NCBI GenBank assembly: GCA_964057225.1
Contig: OZ059899.1
Coordinates: 15,810,001 to 15,874,000, forward strand
DNA length: 64,000 bases
Reading direction: 5' to 3'
Source of the DNA: Auanema rhodensis
Lineage: Eukaryota; Animalia; Nematoda
Part shown: positions 20,401 to 54,455 of the stretch, one piece after another
How the letters are laid out: every line of letters starts with the position of its first letter
Numbering within the stretch: the stretch's first letter is position 1
Position numbers and translations under genes: made by a program
Notes under the pieces: model-generated
The model's input: the letters and a program-made list of their open reading frames with translations, nothing else
Told to the model about the DNA's origin: nothing
Database searches by the model: none

Positions 20401-22231
20401 AAGCATGAGATCTCAAGCCTCCGAGAGCTCTTCATCTCATCACTTATCTCATTTTCTACCTCTTTTTTACTCTCTATCTCTCTCTCTCTCTCTAACTCAA
20501 TCTGCCAAGTAGCAAGAAATAGAAAGAGAAAGAAAACGAAGTGAAAGATGAAGAAGCAAAAGTAAGAAAGCTTCTATTCGTCACATTTGGAATAGATAAA
20601 AGGCGAAGTAAGATACCAAGAGAGCGACAAGTCAGTTTCTCTTCTGAAAACGCACATAATAACACCCAGAACGAAGAAAAGGCGTAAAATGCAGATAGAA
20701 AACGAAGTTTCTATTATGAAAAACTCTTGTTCTACTCTCTTTTTCGCTTAGACTTTCTTTCTCTTCAGCATTTTCCTACTCGTATGTTTTCCGGTGGCTA
20801 TATCAGGCGCACTGGGCTTGCTGAATAAGTAATAAAAACTAAAGATGGCTATTTTCCATGGGCTTCATCTTGAAAAGGCGGTAAGCTCATGAAAGCAACA
20901 GACATACACGTCTTACCACAATCAGATTAGTCATCTACTTCAATTCCGGATTTCTATTGTGAATTTAAAGACATTATAGGATTATAATAGAAGACTCCGA
21001 AATCTTAATCTCAGGTCAAATGAGTAGCAACAGCTGGCTGTCCAAAACCGTTTGACAGATGCGCTTACTTCCTAATAAGGTTTGGAACTCGGCTGACTTA
21101 TCTCATCCAATAGAAACATTCAGAGAAATCTTGCATATAAGATCACACAAATCTATTTGAAGAGCAGATATCAGTGTTGATTTAATGTTTTTTTGTTCTC
21201 TTTATAATTCTTTTTATAACTTCTAATACAGCGTGTTCTATTGACTTCTGGGATCACGAAATACATTTCCCAAAAGGAAAAGAAGCAGAAGAAGAATCAG
21301 CATCAGAAGAAGCAGCTCTACGAAATTAGCCAACTTAGTATGAGGAGGGGGAAGACGCGTCAACAGGCAGATAACCACATCTATTACAGCCGTACCCTCA
21401 GGGGACAGCATCCAGCATATCCGACGGTTAATCCCTCCGGCCAAACCCCAGCATCCCGAATGAAAATCTTATTTCGTGAAATCTCTAAACACTTCTCTAC
21501 AGGGCATGAAGTGCTGACAGATAGGCTTGCCAAGCATAAAATATCTTATTGAATATAGATAGATTAAGCATGAAAAAATTTGTAGAACCCTGATACAACG
21601 ACAAACGAAAGAGAGAGATAAAGTAAGATGTTCCCCTCTACCCTAGCTAGTTCATTCCACGGCATCTAAGATGTGAAATGAAAAAGAATAGAAAAAGAAG
21701 GCAAGATGATGAAAACATGCACAAGAGTACTTATATGGAGATGCTTGATATGGGATCTGAATTATGTCTCATAGTCAATGCAACTCAACTTATTAGAATC
21801 ACTTGTACATCAACAAATTGCTCGCCTAGAGGAAGTGAAAGCAAGACACTGGTGATCATTTCAATTCATACATGTAGGTGTTGATTCCTCATTTTCGCAG
21901 CTATTATACCAATAACGGCTCACACACATAGACTACTACCTCACACATAAATCCGAATTAACACATGCATATATGTGAAAATTAAAAAAAAATTTTAAAT
22001 TGTGAAAACTATACTTACCAGATCAGAAACAGCTAGTGAGAATATGAAGTAGTTAGATGGCTGGCGGATGTTCTTGTCTAGATAATAAGATAACAGAACA
22101 GCCAGATTTCCGATGACGGTGACGACGGATAGGACACCCATAAAGAAGGCCCACGCGATGACACCCAGCTCGTATAACCCGTCATCGGCCGTCGTCGTAC
22201 CATCAATCGGATCAACTGTAGCATTCAGCAT
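5434..22231 (-). CDS. gar-2: G-protein-linked (muscarinic-like) acetylcholine receptor GAR-2, multi-exon
   Basis: Approximate exons: 22231-22019 (TM1-2, [35 protein letters not shown]), 13399-13245 ([26 protein letters not shown]), 13198-13115, 13066-13015, 12965-12797 ([24 protein letters not shown]), 11639-11530, 9213-9031, 8789-8630 ([20 protein letters not shown]), 8219-8148, 7993-7927, 7872-7663, 7535-7500, 6515-6378 ([31 protein letters not shown]), 5583-5434 ([37 protein letters not shown]). Near-identical to the C. elegans GAR-2 sequence as I recall it. Confidence 0.95.
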
Positions 22232-22775: not shown

Positions 22776-25389
22776 ATGTCTTCCGCTCCTGGAACAAGCG
22801 TAGCTCAGCCCCAGGCGTATACTCCTCACAAATGGCTTTTCTCATCAGAGGAGGTAAGAATTAAACACAAAAAAATACTTTTCAACATTAAATTTAGATG
22901 AAAAAGACCAAGAGCGTTCAGGAGGGTTTTACTGAGGAGAAGGAGCTATACTACAGGCAGTTATCAACTAGATTTATCCAGGTTATGGTTGACAGACTAA
23001 ACGAGGCATACAAAGACAGAATGGGACTTATGTTAGTTAAATATATTTTGCTTCAAATATAAAATTATAAATTTTGAAGATCTCAGTACTGTATGTGTGC
23101 TGCCACAATACATATGCATAGGTTTTACTATTTTCATAGTTTTAATGTATTTGACTACCGGGTAATTCTTTTTGTATGTTTAATATATATTACATTTCAT
23201 CGTTCAGGATATTGCTGCTGCTTCACTGTTTCTTTCGGGGAAAAGTGAAGAGAGTCCCCGTAAGTTAGAAGATATAGTTCGAGTTTGGTGGGAGAAAAAA
23301 TATACCAAGCATCCTGTGATACCTCCACAGGTAAATATAGTGGCACTTTTCTTTAAAAAGTTTCAAATGATTTAGCACATTGCTGATGCAAAGGCATACA
23401 TAGTGCAATTGGAAAATGTGATACTTCATACCATAGGTACTATTTGGCTTGTTCAATTTAATATTTATAATTTGATTCAGCGTTTGATCTACAAGTGGAA
23501 CTTCCTCACCCTGTTGTATTGAATGTTATGCATCAAAGTGTTGGTCAGGCGGTTAATGGTTAGTTCCAATTATGCGCCCCGTTGTTTATTCAAGCTTCTA
23601 GATCATGGAAACAAAAAGCTCACTAAATGCGCATATTTCTTCGCAACTGATGTGTAAGTGATGCTGTACCTGTAGTGTATTAGAAATTAACTTTTTAGCC
23701 TCTGTGTGACGAATTGGGCCATACGATATTCTGCCGCTGCGATTGCTATCTGTTGTGTGCACATAGTTTGTGCTTGGTGTCGACATGAGGTGCTGCTTCC
23801 CTTTTGCCTTAAAATATCCTTAAGCGCAGGTCGTAGCGATGACTCGCGCCCGCGCTCGCTGAGCCCATCTTGTAAAGGTGTTTTTTAAGTATGCAAGGTT
23901 CGAGGTTCGCGCGCGGCTCATCGCTGCGAGACCAGCCAAGGTAATGGGCATGGGCTGGATGCGCTGAAGAATTAACTTATTTGTTTTATTTGGAGGTATG
24001 TGTAAGGCGGGGGGGTGCTTAGAAGCTGCCTTTGAGTGAGAATATTGCGCTTACTACACATACACAGGGTCAAAATTTACTTAAAAATTGAAATAAACAT
24101 ATTATAAAAACAGCCCATGAATCAACTATTGAATTTCAGATACCTAAGACACAAGATGGCAGTCACTGGTTCTCTAGAGCAGACCCCACAATGACAGAGG
24201 CTGTTCTAAAGGGTGTGTGCCTTGAGACTTTGTCTGCGATTGTGATTTTTTAGAAAACAAATTTTATGTCCTTTTTATTTATGTTTCTTTTTCAGAAATG
24301 GCTGATGAGTTTGTTCAAATTTATCATAGCTGCAAGGGAAAACTTGCGTTCCAAACAAGCAAATTTTTGCAATCTGGAACCTTTGGGGTATTTCAAACAG
24401 CCATGTTTTGAAAAATATGCAAATTATTTTCAGCCAGGACCATGTGTAACAGGGTCATCATCATCATCGACATCTAATGCCGTTCCTATTTCACCGACAC
24501 CACTTGTGGAGCCATTACCCCCTCCACCTCTTCCACCTTCAATTCCCAGAAAAGTTGATCTAAATGAGTACAAGGTACTCTTATTTCTTCTTGTCATGCT
24601 TTAAACTTTATCTTCCTTTTCAGGAGCGTGCGAAGATAACTCCTAAGGATGGCGATAAATCGAATTCGATGGAGAAGCCGAGAAAGAGCTTTATTCCCGA
24701 TACCTCACAAGTTGGAAAACTTCGGGAACTTCCAAATTTATCATTGCCTGGCATGGAACCTTTACAAAAAGGTATAATATAGCTAAATGACCTTATCTGA
24801 TATTATCATTTAGAACCAAAGAGAGATGATGAACGACGCAGGGAACAACGTGACAAGGATAAGGATCGTGAAAAGCGTAGGGAGGAGAAAGAAAGAAGGA
24901 GAGATGAGAAACCTGAAGATAGAGAGAGGCGACGTGAGGAGGAGAAACGGAAAAGAGAGCATGAGAGAAGTTCTGGTCACGGCAAAGATGGCTATGGAAG
25001 GTTTGTTATTCATCGTATTGTAGGGTAATGAATTTTTTCATTATTTTAGCTATAAAAAACCAAGAACTGAAAATATGCCCTCTTCGACACACCATTCAGT
25101 TAACACCAATGGTTACCATAAGGTGTGTGTAGAGTAGTGACACCTTTTCAATTTTGGCATCTAGGGACAACAGACATTACAATCTCGGGTGCCGAGTGAC
25201 AAATCTTTATCAAGTGCTCAACAAACAATTATGCCTCGACCAGCTAGTTTGGTTACACCTCCAAGGATTTCATTACCTCATGAACCAGCTGTAGCCTTAT
25301 CCCCCCCTCCCCCTGCTCCCTCATTAGTGCCACCTCCTCCACAGCCTCCTCAACATAATGAATTAGAGGATGGTGAAGTGGATGAATAA
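22776..25389 (+). CDS. cit-1: Cyclin T (P-TEFb subunit), cit-1 family
   Basis: Spliced peptide includes KWLFSSEE, AATIYMHRFYYFHSF, AAASLFLSGKSEESPRKLEDIV, QLENVILHTIAFDLQVELPHP, WAIRYSAAAIAICCVHIVCAW and IPKTQDGSHWF. It then has an R/E-rich and Pro-rich tail ending ELEDGEVDE*. Confidence 0.92.
23823..24069 (+). ncRNA. Structured intronic RNA element (long H/ACA-like RNA or cis-regulatory structure) in cyclin T intron 23790-24139
   Basis: Stems readable by eye: AGCGCA 23823-28 with TGCGCT 23960-65; TCGTAGCGATGA 23831-42 with TCATCGCTGCGA 23918-29; CCAGCC 23932-37 with GGCTGG 23953-58; GTATGTGTA 23996-24004 with TACACATAC 24055-63, followed directly by ACA (24064-66). Confidence 0.65.
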
Positions 25390-30164: not shown

Positions 30165-34777
<4,613 letters not shown>

Positions 34778-35065
34778 ATAGAAAATCAAAATATTTTATG
34801 TCATGAATAATTAACCGAGAGCTTTTTGTTCCCCATTGTTGTCTATTTTTTGCCCAATATCTATGATTGTTTTATTTTCTAAAAGATAACTGTTGAAATT
34901 TTTACGAGCATTGATCTCGTCGTCATGAACTTTTGAAACGAAAAATGTCATTGAATTTATCTTTACCTCAATATATATATACATATATATGTTTATATTT
35001 TTACACATACACGCACATATATAATGTCTTGTTTCCAAGCTCTGAAGAATTAATATATTTTTATT

Positions 35066-35179
35066 AATAAAAATCTTTGGAATAATTCAATTGTTTTACT
35101 TTGATGTACATTAATACGGTACTAACCATAATTATCAAATCGATGTAACAAGTGTCGCCGCATCTTCATTTCATTTCAG
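35066..35179 (+). promoter_or_regulatory. Operon-type intercistronic region (poly(A) signal to trans-splice acceptor)
   Basis: AATAAA 35066-71, U-rich tract with TACTTT 35097-35102, TTTCAG 35174-79, ATG at 35198. The ~100-nt spacing is typical of SL2 operons. Confidence 0.65.
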
Positions 35180-45816: not shown

Positions 45817-48800
45817 AGTTTATTTAAAGTTTTCAACAAATTTTACCTATTTTTCAATATTTATTGCGACCTTATAAGTATAAGACTATAATAAGCTGGT
45901 GAAGCTTCTCAGAAGCATCAAGCATCATTCATCTGAATTAATGTTTCAGCTATTTTCTTGTTGCCTTTCTCTTTATTTGTATTTATTTGGTAAATTAATT
46001 GAATATTTTATTTTTTATGTATTTTTATCTCATTTTTTACAAACAAAACTATATATTTCATATATCCAAGTTTATTTGGAGCTTATTAACATAGTCGAAA
46101 GTCAGTTAAATCAAAGAGGGGACCCGGTATCTGATAACCCATCCACTCTGAAGCCTGATAGAACTTGAGTTTAAGATGATAAGCAAGCCATGCTGAAAAA
46201 GTCCAAGATCTTAATTGTCTGACCGACCTCATCATTACTCATTTCCTTGAAGCTGATCATCAGAAAACTTATTTGTATTCGACCTTTGGCCTAATATCTA
46301 GTGAGCTACCAAGTAATATTAGCTAATATAGATGTTAAAAGTAAGTCGAAAAACATCAAATGATTCAATGCCAGTTGGTATCAGTAGCTTGTGCTTAAGT
46401 TTGAGGAAGAGACATCCAAATCAGTTTTTTTTTTGACGAAAGTAATACTCAACTACAAAGATATTTTATCTAATATCTCACAATAGCTGATGTGCACCAT
46501 CCATGAAGCTCTGAAAACAGATCGTTGATGAAGTTGGAAAGGAGAAAAGAAGGAGTTGGATTGGGGGTTTCATGAACATGAGAGAGTGACAAAGAGAGAG
46601 AAAGAGAGATAGAGAAAGAGAGAGGGAGATAGAGAGAGAAAGATGAGAGAGAAAAGAGGGTAATAGTGGAATAACAGTAAATGACAACAAAAAAAAACTT
46701 TATTTTGGAATAATTTTGATTCACATTCGCGAGATTGATACGAAAACAAATTAATTTCATTCGTTATTTCAATGAAAATAAAGAGAAAACTTCCTTTTTC
46801 TCTGTATAATGAAGGTGTGGCATCTTTAACTATGTATAAGAGAAAAAGAATTAACCTTATTGAAGTTATTATAATTTGAGAAAAACATGTTTAGACAAGC
46901 TTAATCGGCTTTAATAATATTCCCCTGTAATCCTATTCAGAATCCATTGTCTTTAATAAATTCATGAAACATTTATGTCATAATCATTAGCCTCACAAGA
47001 ACAGAGAACGAAAAATGTTTGAAAACTCTTAGAAAGCATGTGTTTAACCATCTTCGGATCCCAGCTCACGTTCAAGCTCCATTTTGTGAATGCTGATTTT
47101 CTCATCTGAAGCTATCTATGATGATGAAATTCACATACTTACACATCTCATCACTGTCTTTCGTTAATTTATACAAACTTATATACGATATTCATACATG
47201 ATGAGATGAAGACGTATGACGACGACTTCATGCTGTCTGTTGGTTGACATCGTCAACATGCTCTTCAGATGTCATCGTCATCTATTCTTCCATAGCATCG
47301 TCAGCTATAGATTTCATTGTTAGCTTATCTGACAATGCTTCATCCAAAAGAAACATCGAACATTGAGGAAGCATGATGAAAAAAGGAAGAACATGACTTG
47401 AAAACTTGAAAATGAGAGCAAATGTAATTCACATACGAGTTATAACCAAAGCCATAACATGCTCTTTCTCGATCCTCCTTCCCTTTTTCTTCTCCCTATT
47501 TCCATTCTCGCTATCAAAAGATACATTTTTTTTAAGAGAGAAAAAAATATTTTGAGTGGAATGAAGCCTAATCTCTCATCTCTTTGTTGTTCGTCTAAAA
47601 TTTGATGGCTTTATCACATCCGAACCATTTGAGATATTATTAGTGACAAGATGAATCTCTCAACTTCTATTTTTATTCTTTTATTTTTCTTCTAAACAAA
47701 GAAAATAAAACAAAAATAAAAGAAAATAGGGCATTAGTATAAGAACGTTAGGAATGCTGTGTAGATGGTTGTGTCAGTTAGTCCCTCTCTCCCATCATCT
47801 TCCACTGCACAACAAGTTGATGAGAAGAAGCCCGAATATATAAGGATAGAACTATTTATCTGGCCACATAGCATAACGACAATTATCAGCTTGTCGTTGT
47901 TTTTCTTTTCTTATCCAAGATATCATCAGATTTAGTAGTATGTAGGTAGAGAGTATCATATAATTAGTTTCAAATCCTCTTAGCAACAACTTGAACACAT
48001 ATCCAACACTATCTACTTCAGTCTCTAGTTCTCACTCTCTAGTTCTCTCTCTCTCTCTAAGTTTTTCTTTCACTTTCTCTCTATCTCACTCTCTCTCTCT
48101 CTCTCTATCTCTAAATCTCTCAGCTGCACACTGTATGTATTTTATAATTTTGAAATTCATTGAAGTTCATTTTTTGGTTACAAACCGTGAAAATTATAGT
48201 AATTGGACGTCATTTTCGAAAAATATTGTTTGTTGACTTGACGACAACGATGAACCTGCTGAATAGAAATGGCAACTTTCATGAAATTGGTTCAAAAGGC
48301 AAAGGGGTTAATCAGTGTCACTCACTCATTCAGATCACATTCTCGGTGATCTGAGTGACGTGAAGAAGCTTTTAAAGTTGTAAGGAAATGGAGCTTTCAA
48401 AAAGAAGACACACGCTTGAACGTTTGATTCCTCTTTCTAGTTGTACGAAAAGCTGTAAATGAGGTTTGAAGAAGGGTGTGGGATGTAGGCGGTGGCTTAT
48501 AGGCGTTTAAGCATGTATTTCACCACTTTTTATGCTGAAAAACAATGCTTGAAATGGTTGCTATAAGCATAACTGATTAGCTTCTTTCAATTTCTAGCAT
48601 GAGTTGTATGATCATACATTGGTCAGTATGGATATAATCTGTATTCTATATTTAGACAAATTTTTCCTGCATATTCTCATAAATGATTCCTTTCAAGTGT
48701 TTTCTTCATATTTCTCTCTCTCTACCTCTCTCAAGCTTATCTCTCTCCTCATTTCCTTCTCTTGTATTTTGATTCATGATCTATTATCCCACTCTTTAGT

Positions 48801-53209: not shown

Positions 53210-54455
53210 CAGCAGTAGTCAGTTATGCACAGGAAGACGAGACATTCCTGGATAAAAGAGCGGGAGCTCGATTCTTTGTCACAGAAGCTAAACGAGGGGG
53301 TGCTCGAGCCTTCATGATGCCAGGCATGGAGGACAAACGCGGAGGAGCAAGAGCCTTTGGAGGTTTGTTTCACAGTATCAACTGTTATGATTGGGTTCTT
53401 TGTGTTATTAGTATAGCGATTATCAAGGGGGGTGATAATTTAGTGAAATTGATAACATGACTTCATGTGTGCCGCCATAGCTCAGTCGGTTAGAGCGTGG
53501 GTCTAATAAGCCCAAGGTCGCAGGTTCGACCCCTGCTGGCGGCAAAACATTTTACTTTTACGGTTTGTATCAAATAATACTTACGTATCTGTTTTGCAGG
53601 ACTGAAGCGTTTTGTACCAACTAACATTTTGGAGGAAGAAGAAGAGAAAAGAGGAGGTGGTCGAGCTTTCTTGGCTGAAGACAAACGAGGAGGTGGACGT
53701 GCCTTCTCCGAAATCAAACGTGGTGGCGGAAGGTACATTTCATTTCAAATGTACAAAGACAATATATATGTTACTGTTTTACAGAGCTTTCACTGAAAAG
53801 AGAGGAGGTGGACGAGCTTTCATAGAGACACGAGGTGGTGCCAGAGCAGCACTCATAGCCGATAAGCGTGGTGGTGCTCGCATGTTCATCAATGACAAGC
53901 GCGACTATGATCCAGAAGGCTTGTGGGATGTTGATCCCCGAGCATATGAGGTAATCATGCAGTTCTAAGATTGATTAGATATTTGCGTACCATACATTAC
54001 AAAGTAAATTGCAGATGCTAAAACGAGCAGGAGGTAGAGCTTTCCGCATCGACGGTGGTGGTATGTTTTGAACCAACCCAGTGAGTTGCTTTGCTTCGCA
54101 TGACTCTTATCCTCTGTTTTTCTTCTTCAAGGAAATGTCTTTGTGTATAATGAAGATACAGCAAATAAATTAAAAATAATTCTACATTGGCTTTCATACC
54201 TTATTTCTGAACCTACTTTCCGTTCTTTCTAAGCTTAACGAATGGTCTTTCGCTTTCCAGTATCTTGGCTGTTAGCAGACCTTAATATATCAAATAAGCA
54301 TTCTACTAAGCACAAAAGTTCCTCTAAAACAATACAAAAATCAAAATTTGACAGCCGAGCAAGCGAATACTTATCTTTGTTTTTCAGACAGTCAGGCTAC
54401 CTCTAAACGTGGTGGTGGCCGAAGTTTCCCGGTTCATAATTCTAAAGAAACCTAG
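53210..54455 (+). CDS. nlp-21: GGARAF/GGGRAF neuropeptide precursor (NLP-21-like); first signal-peptide exon not located
   Basis: Basic-residue-flanked peptides AGARFFVTEA, GGARAFMMPGMED, GGARAFGGL, GGGRAFLAED, GGGRAFSEI, GGGRAFTE, GGGRAFIET, GGARAALIAD, GGARMFIND, AGGRAFRIDG.. and GGGRSFPVHNSKET. The high copy number fits nlp-21 better than nlp-9. Confidence 0.85.
53471..53544 (+). tRNA. tRNA-Ile (anticodon AAT), inside an nlp-21 intron
   Basis: Full cloverleaf: acceptor GCCGCCA/TGGCGGC, D arm GCTC/GAGC, anticodon arm TGGGT-CT AAT AA-GCCCA, T arm GCAGG-TTCGACC-CCTGC, downstream TTTT. Confidence 0.97.

What the first reader, a model, noticed from the sequence alone, without database searches (positions are those of the whole stretch)
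23790..24139. Large GC-rich structured RNA ending in hairpin-ACA inside a cyclin T intron
Seen: this intron is 350 nt while the other cyclin T introns are ~45-85 nt. Its core is strongly GC-rich and folds into a three-way junction: closing AGCGCA/TGCGCT, a ~100-nt long arm with a 12-bp basal helix including a G-U pair, and a CCAGCC/GGCTGG arm. A U-rich hinge follows, then a hairpin with a perfect 9-bp base and ACA-NNN, ending ~70 nt before the 3' splice site. Knowledge: hairpin-hinge-hairpin-ACA at that distance from the acceptor is the layout of intronic H/ACA RNAs, but ordinary guides are ~130 nt. Atypical long members include U17/snR30 and the intron-encoded nematode telomerase RNA. Inference: an unusual ~250-nt H/ACA-class RNA. 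Its location in the P-TEFb cyclin gene raises the speculative idea of a 7SK-like or feedback RNA. Caveats: the H box is imperfect (AGAATTA 23968-74), and there is no GCCTAA template, no U17 m1/m2 motif and no 7SK GAUC motif.
Basis: partly seen in the sequence, partly recalled or inferred. Interest (0 to 1): 0.8.

Follow-up and report, generated by a model that had tools for sequence, protein, structure and literature searches.

The report
Conserved folded RNA in cyclin T intron
The one long intron of this roundworm's cyclin T gene holds a GC-rich folded RNA between a weak, used splice start and a strong, unused one; other roundworms share this layout, so it probably controls splicing of the gene and is not a snoRNA-type guide RNA.

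Summary
Spliced RNA contigs confirm that 23790-24139 is a 350-nt GT..AG intron, against 43-83 nt for its neighbours. The described helices, the 9-bp hairpin and the ACA are all present.

The H/ACA reading is not supported:
- There is no ANANNA H box.
- Rfam gives no match, even at E<=10.
- The ACA is absent after the matching hairpin in strongylids.
- The "3' hairpin" overlaps a consensus 5' splice site, GAG|GTATGT at 23993-24001.

The element is nonetheless real and old. The same intron position carries a GC-rich structured block in three strongylids, three Pristionchus species and one Caenorhabditis auriculariae paralog. In each, the block starts at a weak donor (GTGCTG-like) and ends at AG|GTATG.
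- In strongylids the first ~250 nt are 68-94% identical in all three species, against 6-36% further on.
- They form a 78-pair rod with 6 compensatory pairs.
- Two strongylid motifs each occur once in the 64-kb window, both inside this intron, and they pair with each other.

Best explanation (about 0.45): a structured pre-mRNA module that sets the choice between the productive weak donor and a premature-stop-producing internal donor. The function is inferred, and no minor isoform or stable RNA was seen. The closest relative, Auanema sp. JU1783, lacks the GC-rich core.

The parts
23699..23789 (+). Upstream cyclin T exon (LCVTNW...CRHE). Its last 58 nt (23732-23789) plus intron nt 1-7 are 100% identical to Auanema sp. 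JU1783.
   Evidence: Exon ends come from the RNA contigs. Identity is 86/91, against 70-88% for the other exons.
23790..24139 (+). The 350-nt intron (GT..AG), the only long one in the gene.
   Evidence: Spliced RNA contigs X1-X3.
23790..23795 (+). Donor 1, GTGCTG. It is weak (2 of 6 matches to GTAAGT) but is the one used in the mRNA.
   Evidence: The same hexamer occurs in N. brasiliensis, O. ostertagi, C. auriculariae and Auanema sp. JU1783.
23797..23809 (+). C-rich 5' strand motif TTCCCTTTTGCCT, shared with strongylids. It can pair with 23946-23954.
   Evidence: The pattern TTCCCN(3-4)TGCCT matches once in the window (0.13 expected) and once in each strongylid intron.
23823..23965 (+). GC-rich core. 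It is a three-way junction in the minimum-energy fold, or the distal part of a strongylid-like rod in a fold only 4.6 kcal/mol weaker.
23831..23929 (+). Long arm (arms 23831-52 / 23908-29) with a U.G pair that favours the + strand.
23881..23889 (+). Candidate internal acceptor TTTTTTAAG in the apical region of the long arm. If used with donor 2 it gives a 106-nt cassette (23890-23995) with stop TGA at 23965-67.
   Evidence: Sequence reading. Strongylids have GGGTTCTAG at +98 in the apical loop. No RNA evidence.
23886..23888 (+). In-frame TAA, reached if the exon is extended past donor 1.
   Evidence: ORF 23706..23888.
23946..23955 (+). G-rich 3' strand motif GGGCATGGGC, shared with strongylids.
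   Evidence: The pattern GGGCATN(0-2)GGGC matches once in the window (0.05 expected) and once in each strongylid intron.
23993..24001 (+). Internal donor 2, GAG|GTATGT (5 of 6 matches to GTAAGT). It is not used in the dominant mRNA.
   Evidence: AGGTATG occurs twice on the + strand of the 64-kb window, once here, and once in every element-bearing orthologous intron.
23996..24063 (+). Hairpin whose 5' arm is donor 2.
   Evidence: (I10). In the full-intron fold the same bases pair instead with 23814-23821.
24064..24066 (+). ACA triplet. It is present but not conserved in strongylids.
24140..24212 (+). Downstream exon (IPKTQDGSHW...).

Best explanation
The GC-rich fold is a cis-acting part of the cyclin T (cit-1) pre-mRNA, not a separate guide RNA.

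Layout. The intron opens with a weak donor (GAG|GTGCTG). About 200 nt of stable helices follow. Then comes a much better donor (GAG|GTATGT at 23996), and then about 144 nt of ordinary AT-rich intron.

Productive and unproductive paths. The mRNA uses the weak donor. Using the strong internal donor, or retaining the intron, extends the exon into an in-frame stop (TAA 23886-88) and gives an unproductive transcript.

Proposed role of the fold. The helices draw the two donors together and place the internal donor in alternative helices. The fold therefore sets the ratio of productive to unproductive splicing and tunes cyclin T output.

Shown versus inferred.
- Shown: the intron and its use of donor 1; the fold; the second donor; the premature stop; the same architecture at the same intron in strongylids, Pristionchus and one Caenorhabditis paralog; strong conservation with compensatory changes in strongylids.
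- Inferred: that donor 2 is ever used; that the fold controls the choice; that the unproductive RNA is degraded; and any link to P-TEFb activity, for example through elongation rate.
For: Intron and donor strength
- The intron and its use of donor 1 are confirmed by RNA contigs.
- In every element-bearing species, donor 1 matches 2-3 of 6 consensus positions and donor 2 matches 4-5 of 6.

The AGGTATG motif
- It occurs exactly once in this intron in the window, N. brasiliensis, A. cantonensis, O. ostertagi, three Pristionchus species and C. auriculariae paralog P0023.
- It always sits at the 3' edge of the GC-rich block.
- It is otherwise rare in these loci: 0-2 per strand and locus.

Strongylid conservation
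- Intron nt 1-250 are 68-94% identical in all three species, against 6-36% further on.
- They form a 78-pair rod running from 7 nt after donor 1 to about 10 nt before donor 2. 94% of cells are paired, and 6 pairs changed on both sides, against 0-1 in the slid controls.

Link between the window and strongylids
- Both strongylid strand motifs occur once each in the window, in this intron, in the same order, and they pair with each other.
- The strongylid-like rod costs only +4.6 kcal/mol.

Other lineages
- Pristionchus shares a roughly 530-nt conserved structured block with 23 compensated pairs. It is closed by a helix that touches donor 2.
- In C. auriculariae the 5' and 3' GC-rich parts pair across an AT-rich insert, and donor 2 lies in a local hairpin.
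- Lineages without the element have a short intron with a consensus-like donor (Mesorhabditis, GTAAAC, 46 nt) or a plain AT-rich intron.

Read-through gene products
- Truncated products that read from this exon into this intron are on record for O. dentatum, A. suum, Anisakis, five filarial genera, Syphacia and Meloidogyne.
- The filarial read-through peptide is conserved.
Against: - No transcript using donor 2 or retaining the intron was seen in this species. Each RNA run gave one spliced contig, and contigs drop rare forms.
- Predicted pairing probability of donor 2 (0.56-0.81) is not clearly above the background of each RNA (0.58-0.67), and donor 1 is predicted paired as well. Masking of donor 2 is therefore not demonstrated.
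- A covariance model built from the strongylid element does not find the window, Pristionchus or C. auriculariae elements. Homology beyond strongylids plus the window rests on position, architecture and short motifs chosen after seeing both.
- The closest relative, Auanema sp. JU1783, has a 261-nt AT-rich intron with no AGGTATG and no stable fold (z +1.5). The element is therefore dispensable there.
- The truncated gene models may be prediction errors at a weak donor and not real isoforms.
Confidence: 0.45

Rival explanations
1. The block is a stable intron-derived non-coding RNA of a new class, not H/ACA. The structured 5' part of the intron would survive after splicing, as a lariat-derived or trimmed RNA, and act in trans, possibly on P-TEFb/HEXIM.
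For: - Strong conservation and compensatory pairs in strongylids and Pristionchus.
- No known family matches.
Against: - Conservation begins at intron nucleotide +1 and ends at a splice-donor motif. Those are the limits expected of a splicing element, not of an RNA trimmed to protein-protected ends.
- No RNA run holding the intron was listed.
- There are no box motifs.
Confidence: 0.2
2. The internal AG|GTATGT is a recursive (ratchet) splice site. The structured 5' part would be removed first, as a mini-intron whose ends the rod brings together. The regenerated donor would then remove the remainder.
For: - AG lies directly before GT in all lineages.
- In the window a U-rich tract precedes it, and C. 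auriculariae has CCTTGCAG|GTATGT.
- The rod brings donor 1 next to this site.
Against: - The -3 base is G (GAG) in the window, strongylids and Pristionchus. GAG is a poor acceptor.
- Strongylids and Pristionchus lack a U-rich tract there.
- Strongylid introns are long anyway, so there is no need to shorten this one.
Confidence: 0.12
3. One reading: an atypical ~250-nt H/ACA RNA processed from the intron.
For: - The layout is hairpin domain, U-rich hinge, hairpin, then ACA.
- The lower stem ends about 14 nt before the ACA.
- It is intronic, which is the usual place for nematode snoRNAs.
Against: - No ANANNA in the hinge.
- No Rfam hit at E<=10.
- The ACA is not conserved in strongylids.
- The hairpin's z-score is only -1.1.
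- The hairpin's 5' arm is the conserved splice-donor motif.
- The H/ACA layout is absent from Auanema sp. JU1783.
Confidence: 0.03
4. A DNA-level element: an intronic promoter or enhancer, or an alternative non-coding first exon ending at donor 2.
For: - It is a GC-rich island in AT-rich DNA.
- A donor at its 3' edge would suit a first exon.
Against: - The compensatory changes keep Watson-Crick and G.U pairs on the + strand, between intron nt 7-111 and 124-213 in strongylids.
- The + strand folds better than the - strand in the window.
- Conservation is highest directly after donor 1.
Confidence: 0.07
5. A lineage-specific neutral insertion, such as a foldback or MITE remnant, whose resemblance to the other nematodes is coincidental.
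For: - Absent from the closest relative.
- Earlier notes say GC-rich islands in long introns are common in this genome (unchecked).
- The strongylid covariance model misses it.
Against: - No second copy in the window.
- No terminal inverted repeats with target-site duplication.
- Three independent short motifs lie in the right order at the orthologous position.
Confidence: 0.08

Closest known systems
Unproductive (premature-stop) splicing with conserved intron sequence in C. elegans ribosomal-protein and splicing-factor genes (my recollection of Mitrovich and Anderson 2000 and later work; not checked here).
   Same: Competing splice sites inside one intron, a premature stop in the alternative form, and intron sequence conserved far above neutral.
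   Different: The gene is the P-TEFb cyclin. The conserved part is a long GC-rich rod of about 200-550 nt with compensatory changes. The isoform itself and its decay have not been observed.
RNA structures that mask or juxtapose 5' splice sites, such as the MAPT exon 10 donor hairpin, SMN2 TSL2 and yeast intron 'zipper' stems (from my own knowledge).
   Same: A helix involves the donor, or brings distant splice signals together.
   Different: This structure is far larger and spans two donors. Predicted masking of donor 2 is not above background.
Intronic H/ACA snoRNAs and the intron-borne Caenorhabditis telomerase RNA (PMC12921731).
   Same: An intronic, structured RNA with a hairpin followed by ACA near the 3' end. 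The length falls in the 200-500-nt range quoted for telomerase RNAs.
   Different: There is no H box, no conserved ACA, no template and no Rfam or covariance-model match. Its limits coincide with splice signals.
7SK RNA / HEXIM / P-TEFb.
   Same: A structured RNA linked to cyclin T. HEXIM and 7SK homologues have been proposed in nematodes (PMC4227133, citing Marz et al. 2009).
   Different: There is no Rfam 7SK match and no GAUC pair in the window. A GAUC/GAUC pair in N. brasiliensis is not kept in A. cantonensis. The element is not an independent gene.

Membership tests
H/ACA box RNA | Hairpin-hinge-hairpin-tail layout | tested here: met
   The folds give a 5' domain, a U-rich linker and a 3' hairpin. 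The 5' 'hairpin' is a 143-nt three-way junction, which is atypical.
H/ACA box RNA | H box ANANNA in the hinge | tested here: not met
   No hexamer in 23966-23995 fits ANANNA (read). The best candidate is AGAATT.
H/ACA box RNA | ACA three nt from the 3' end, kept in orthologues | tested here: not met
   ACA is present at 24064-66 in the window. No ACA follows the donor-2 hairpin in N. brasiliensis, A. cantonensis or O. ostertagi. The 3' end of any RNA is unknown.
H/ACA box RNA | Pseudouridylation pocket complementary to rRNA or snRNA | not tested
H/ACA box RNA | Accumulates as a discrete RNA bound by dyskerin | not testable with these tools
   No RNA run holding the intron was listed. The RNA contigs are spliced mRNA.
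Any Rfam family (including snoRNAs, 7SK, telomerase RNA, RNase P/MRP) | Covariance-model match | tested here: not met
   Nothing in the intron at E<=10. Nothing at gathering score in L001-L003. Nothing relevant in the A. sp. JU1783 or P. pacificus introns at E<=10.
Nematode telomerase RNA | Template complementary to about 1.5 TTAGGC repeats | tested here: not met
   No 7-mer or longer of the repeat complement on either strand.
7SK RNA | 5' hairpin with paired GAUC motifs; independent Pol III gene | tested here: not met
   No GAUC in the long arm of the window. The element lies inside a Pol II intron.
Alternative 5' splice site / unproductive splicing unit | Two competing donors in one intron, the alternative giving a premature stop | tested here: met
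   Donor 1 is at 23790 and donor 2 at 23996. The in-frame TAA is at 23886-88.
Alternative 5' splice site / unproductive splicing unit | Conservation of the regulated region across species | tested here: met
   Not met in Auanema sp. JU1783.
Alternative 5' splice site / unproductive splicing unit | The alternative isoform exists and is NMD-sensitive | tested here: inconclusive
   It is not seen in the three RNA contig sets. Read-through truncated products are on record in at least 10 other nematodes, but these may be prediction artefacts.
Recursive splice site | Acceptor (Y-tract plus YAG) directly abutting a donor | tested here: inconclusive
   AG|GT is present everywhere. However, the -3 base is G in most lineages, and a U-tract is present only in the window.

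The most novel reading that the evidence does not exclude
The rod is a sensor built into the cyclin T pre-mRNA that reads P-TEFb activity. It could do so kinetically: faster elongation would expose the strong internal donor sooner and shift splicing to the unproductive form. Or it could do so by direct binding of HEXIM/P-TEFb to the double-stranded rod. Either way, nematodes would have a cis-encoded homeostat for P-TEFb, analogous in purpose to 7SK but unrelated to it.
Probability: 0.1. Interest if true: 0.85.

Novelty: new variant of a known kind. Interest (0 to 1): 0.62.

Why it matters
Cyclin T/CDK9 (P-TEFb) sets the rate of release of RNA polymerase II into elongation. In vertebrates its dosage is buffered by the 7SK RNP, but in nematodes this control is poorly defined.

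This is a deeply conserved RNA structure inside the cyclin T gene itself, with compensatory changes. It sits between a weak productive donor and a strong unproductive donor. It would give a directly testable route for post-transcriptional control of P-TEFb in nematodes, parasitic strongylids and possibly filariae included.

The element has no Rfam family, and I found no paper describing it in the searchable library.

Tried and rejected
- **Rfam.** Searched at gathering and at E<=10 on the window intron and on the A. sp. JU1783 and P. pacificus introns. Nothing relevant.
- **Sequencing runs.** No run holds the intron. Three small runs of the same species label gave only spliced mRNA contigs, which fix the intron borders but say nothing about minor forms or small RNAs.
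- **Repeat and MITE check.** No other copy in the 64-kb window. A whole-genome copy count was not possible with the collections on hand.
- **Telomerase template search.** Negative.
- **tRNA/SINE idea** (a GGTTCGAGG B-box-like word). ARAGORN and Rfam find nothing in the intron, and a T6 run lies between the putative boxes.
- **Strongylid covariance model.** Model R1 does not detect the window, Pristionchus or C. auriculariae elements, with filters on or off.
- **Base-pair probabilities.** They do not single out donor 2 as masked.
- **Encoding-contig look-ups.** Two were lost on isoform representatives, and P0002 was not on record. C. elegans cit-1.1/1.2 loci could not be fetched.
- **Literature.** One broad paper search was uninformative.
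- **Bacterial promoter/terminator scan.** Irrelevant here.
- **Joined protein model.** The spliced protein model of the window was never assembled or searched. One exon was searched by reference, and after that stored proteins of relatives were used.
Full report
**1. What is there**

The window is nematode DNA. It carries a ceN47 snoRNA homologue and a tRNA-Ile.

The gene around the finding is cyclin T. One exon, searched by reference, hit a 534-aa cyclin T of Auanema sp. JU1783 (A. melissensis) at 98% identity, with Pfam Cyclin_N and CycT2-like_C. That locus (L001) aligns to the window on both flanks at about 70-80% DNA identity, so it is the orthologue in a congener or close relative.

Logan RNA contigs from three runs with the same species label lie on the exons and skip 350 nt with GT..AG ends. 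This gives an intron of 23790-24139. The other five introns laid skip 43-83 nt.

**2. Is the fold more than chance?**

On energy alone, only modestly.
- The 5' domain has z = -2.7. The + strand is 12 kcal/mol better than the - strand, because of G.U pairs.
- The 3' hairpin has z = -1.1 and the whole intron z = -1.25.
- In a sliding scan of the window it is the most stable 150-mer in absolute terms. After correcting for GC it ranks among about 40 outliers.
- No other copy exists in the window.

**3. Tests of the H/ACA, telomerase and 7SK readings**

- Rfam finds nothing in the intron even at E<=10.
- The hinge has no ANANNA hexamer.
- There is no telomere-template word of 7 nt or more.
- There is no GAUC pair.

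**4. The comparative result that changes the picture**

The intron position, after the codon for the E that ends ...VC.W...E, is shared by several species:

| Species | Intron length |
|---|---|
| P. pacificus | 724 nt |
| P. entomophagus | 643 nt |
| P. fissidentatus | 547 nt |
| N. brasiliensis | about 636 nt |
| A. cantonensis | about 1650 nt |
| O. ostertagi | about 1620 nt |
| C. auriculariae, paralog P0023 | about 1650 nt |

*Strongylids.* In the three strongylids the first ~250 nt of the intron are 68-94% identical in all three species. The rest is 6-36% identical. The first 50 nt, at 94%, are better conserved than the flanking exon.

RNAalifold folds the block into one long rod of 78 pairs. 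It runs from 7 nt after the donor to about 10 nt before an internal AGAG|GTATGT. 94% of cells are paired. Six pairs changed on both sides, against 0-1 in slid controls, and 10-24 of 500 shuffles reach the observed measures.

*Pristionchus.* The three species share a larger GC-rich block of about 530 nt, with 23 compensated pairs. It ends at GAGAG|GTATGC.

*C. auriculariae.* Paralog P0023 starts GTGCTG. Its 5' and 3' GC-rich parts pair across an AT-rich insert, and it has CCTTGCAG|GTATGT in a local hairpin.

*The AGGTATG motif.* It occurs exactly once in each of these introns and once in the window's intron (23994). It is rare elsewhere in the loci. In every case donor 1 is poor (2-3 of 6 matches to GTAAGT) and the internal donor is good (4-5 of 6).

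*Introns without the block.* These are either short with a consensus-like donor (Mesorhabditis, 46 nt, GTAAAC) or plain AT-rich (C. auriculariae paralog P0009).

**5. Is the window's element the same thing?**

A covariance model built from the three strongylids does not find it. Formal homology is therefore not shown by that test.

Other evidence points to homology.
- Two strongylid strand motifs, TTCCC-N3-4-TGCCT and GGGCAT-N0-2-GGGC, each match exactly once in the 64-kb window. Expected counts are 0.13 and 0.05. Both matches lie inside this intron, in the same order.
- They pair with each other as in strongylids. Forcing that pairing gives a strongylid-like rod only 4.6 kcal/mol above the minimum-energy fold.
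- The motifs were chosen after seeing both sequences, so this is supportive and not blind.
- GTGCTG at +1 and GAG|GTATGT at the 3' edge add to it.

I take the window's element as a diverged member of the strongylid element. The Pristionchus and Caenorhabditis blocks are positional and architectural counterparts.

**6. The awkward fact**

The closest relative, Auanema sp. JU1783, keeps a long intron (261 nt) and the GTGCTGC start. It has no GC-rich core, no AGGTATG and no stable fold (z +1.5). It aligns at the neutral level: 47% of aligned columns, the same as the small introns at 45-63%.

It may retain a miniature version: a GTCCCA/GGGGTAC hairpin and a GTATGC at +98. That is a post hoc reading. 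The element is thus dispensable in at least some lineages.

Curiously, the last 58 nt of the upstream exon plus the first 7 nt of the intron are 100% identical between the two species, while other exons are 70-88% identical. This points to an RNA-level constraint at donor 1 that I could not explain further.

**7. Mechanism**

Reading past donor 1 meets TAA at 23886-88. A possible cassette, from the acceptor-like TTTTTTAAG at 23881-89 to donor 2, meets TGA at 23965-67. Either alternative is unproductive.

The simplest model is a structured splicing module that governs the choice between a weak productive donor and a strong unproductive one.

Indirect support comes from truncated cyclin T products that read from this exon straight into this intron. 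They are on record for O. dentatum (whose tail is the translated start of the strongylid element), A. suum (named Cyclin-T1.1), Anisakis, Brugia, Loa, Onchocerca, Litomosoides, Cercopithifilaria, Syphacia and Meloidogyne. The filarial read-through tail is conserved over about 23 codons. These may reflect real retained or extended transcripts, or gene predictors failing on a weak donor.

Against over-reading:
- Pairing probabilities do not show that donor 2 is specially masked.
- No alternative isoform was seen in this species.

Rivals are a stable intron-derived RNA of a new class, a recursive splice site, a DNA element, and a neutral insertion. They are weighed in the Rival explanations section.

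**8. Novelty**

No Rfam family matches. No paper in the searchable library describes a conserved element in cit-1 introns.

The kind of mechanism, conserved intron structure with competing splice sites and a premature stop, is known. Its presence in the P-TEFb cyclin gene, and the size and depth of conservation of the rod, appear to be new.

**9. Limits**

- Read laying, the look-up of sequencing runs and the encoding-contig look-ups are exhausted.
- C. elegans loci, filarial DNA and a genome-wide copy count were out of reach.

Noticed in passing
window 23732-23796: The last 58 nt of the upstream cyclin T exon plus the first 7 intron nt are 100% identical to Auanema sp. JU1783. Other exons are 70-88% identical and small introns 45-63%. 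The stretch contains a small hairpin that gave a chance-level mir-248 hit. This suggests an RNA-level constraint at the weak donor.
   Followed up: partly
window 32046-32178 (+): Homologue of the nematode C/D snoRNA ceN47 (Rfam RF01637, 46.7 bits against a gathering score of 35).
   Followed up: no
window 53470-53545 (+): tRNA-Ile (AAT) gene.
   Followed up: no
window 20401-20600 (-), 34876-35100 (-), 47201-47350 (both strands), 24276-24425 (+): These have the strongest GC-corrected folding outliers in the 150-nt scan of the window (-3 to -3.7 sd), stronger than the finding itself. 34876-35100 lies just upstream of the ASDURF/ALG1 unit noted by earlier reports.
   Followed up: no
Proteins P0055, P0061, P0064, P0065, P0067 (filarial cyclin T models): Five filarial genera have truncated models ending in a conserved read-through tail (VTAV.TK..AKTL...YILNL..) from this same intron. 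This implies that the first ~70 nt of the intron are conserved in filariae as well.
   Followed up: partly
L002 3170-3200 and L004 2860-2890 (Pristionchus element): The Pristionchus block holds repeated GATCT words (TGATCTCTGATCTCT) in a conserved stretch. The significance is unknown, and there is no 7SK match in Rfam.
   Followed up: no
L009 103-6576 (-) and 8001-15724 (+): C. auriculariae has two divergently oriented cyclin T paralogs. Only one (P0023) carries the GTGCTG...AG|GTATGT structured intron. The other has a plain ~200-nt AT-rich intron at the same position.
   Followed up: partly
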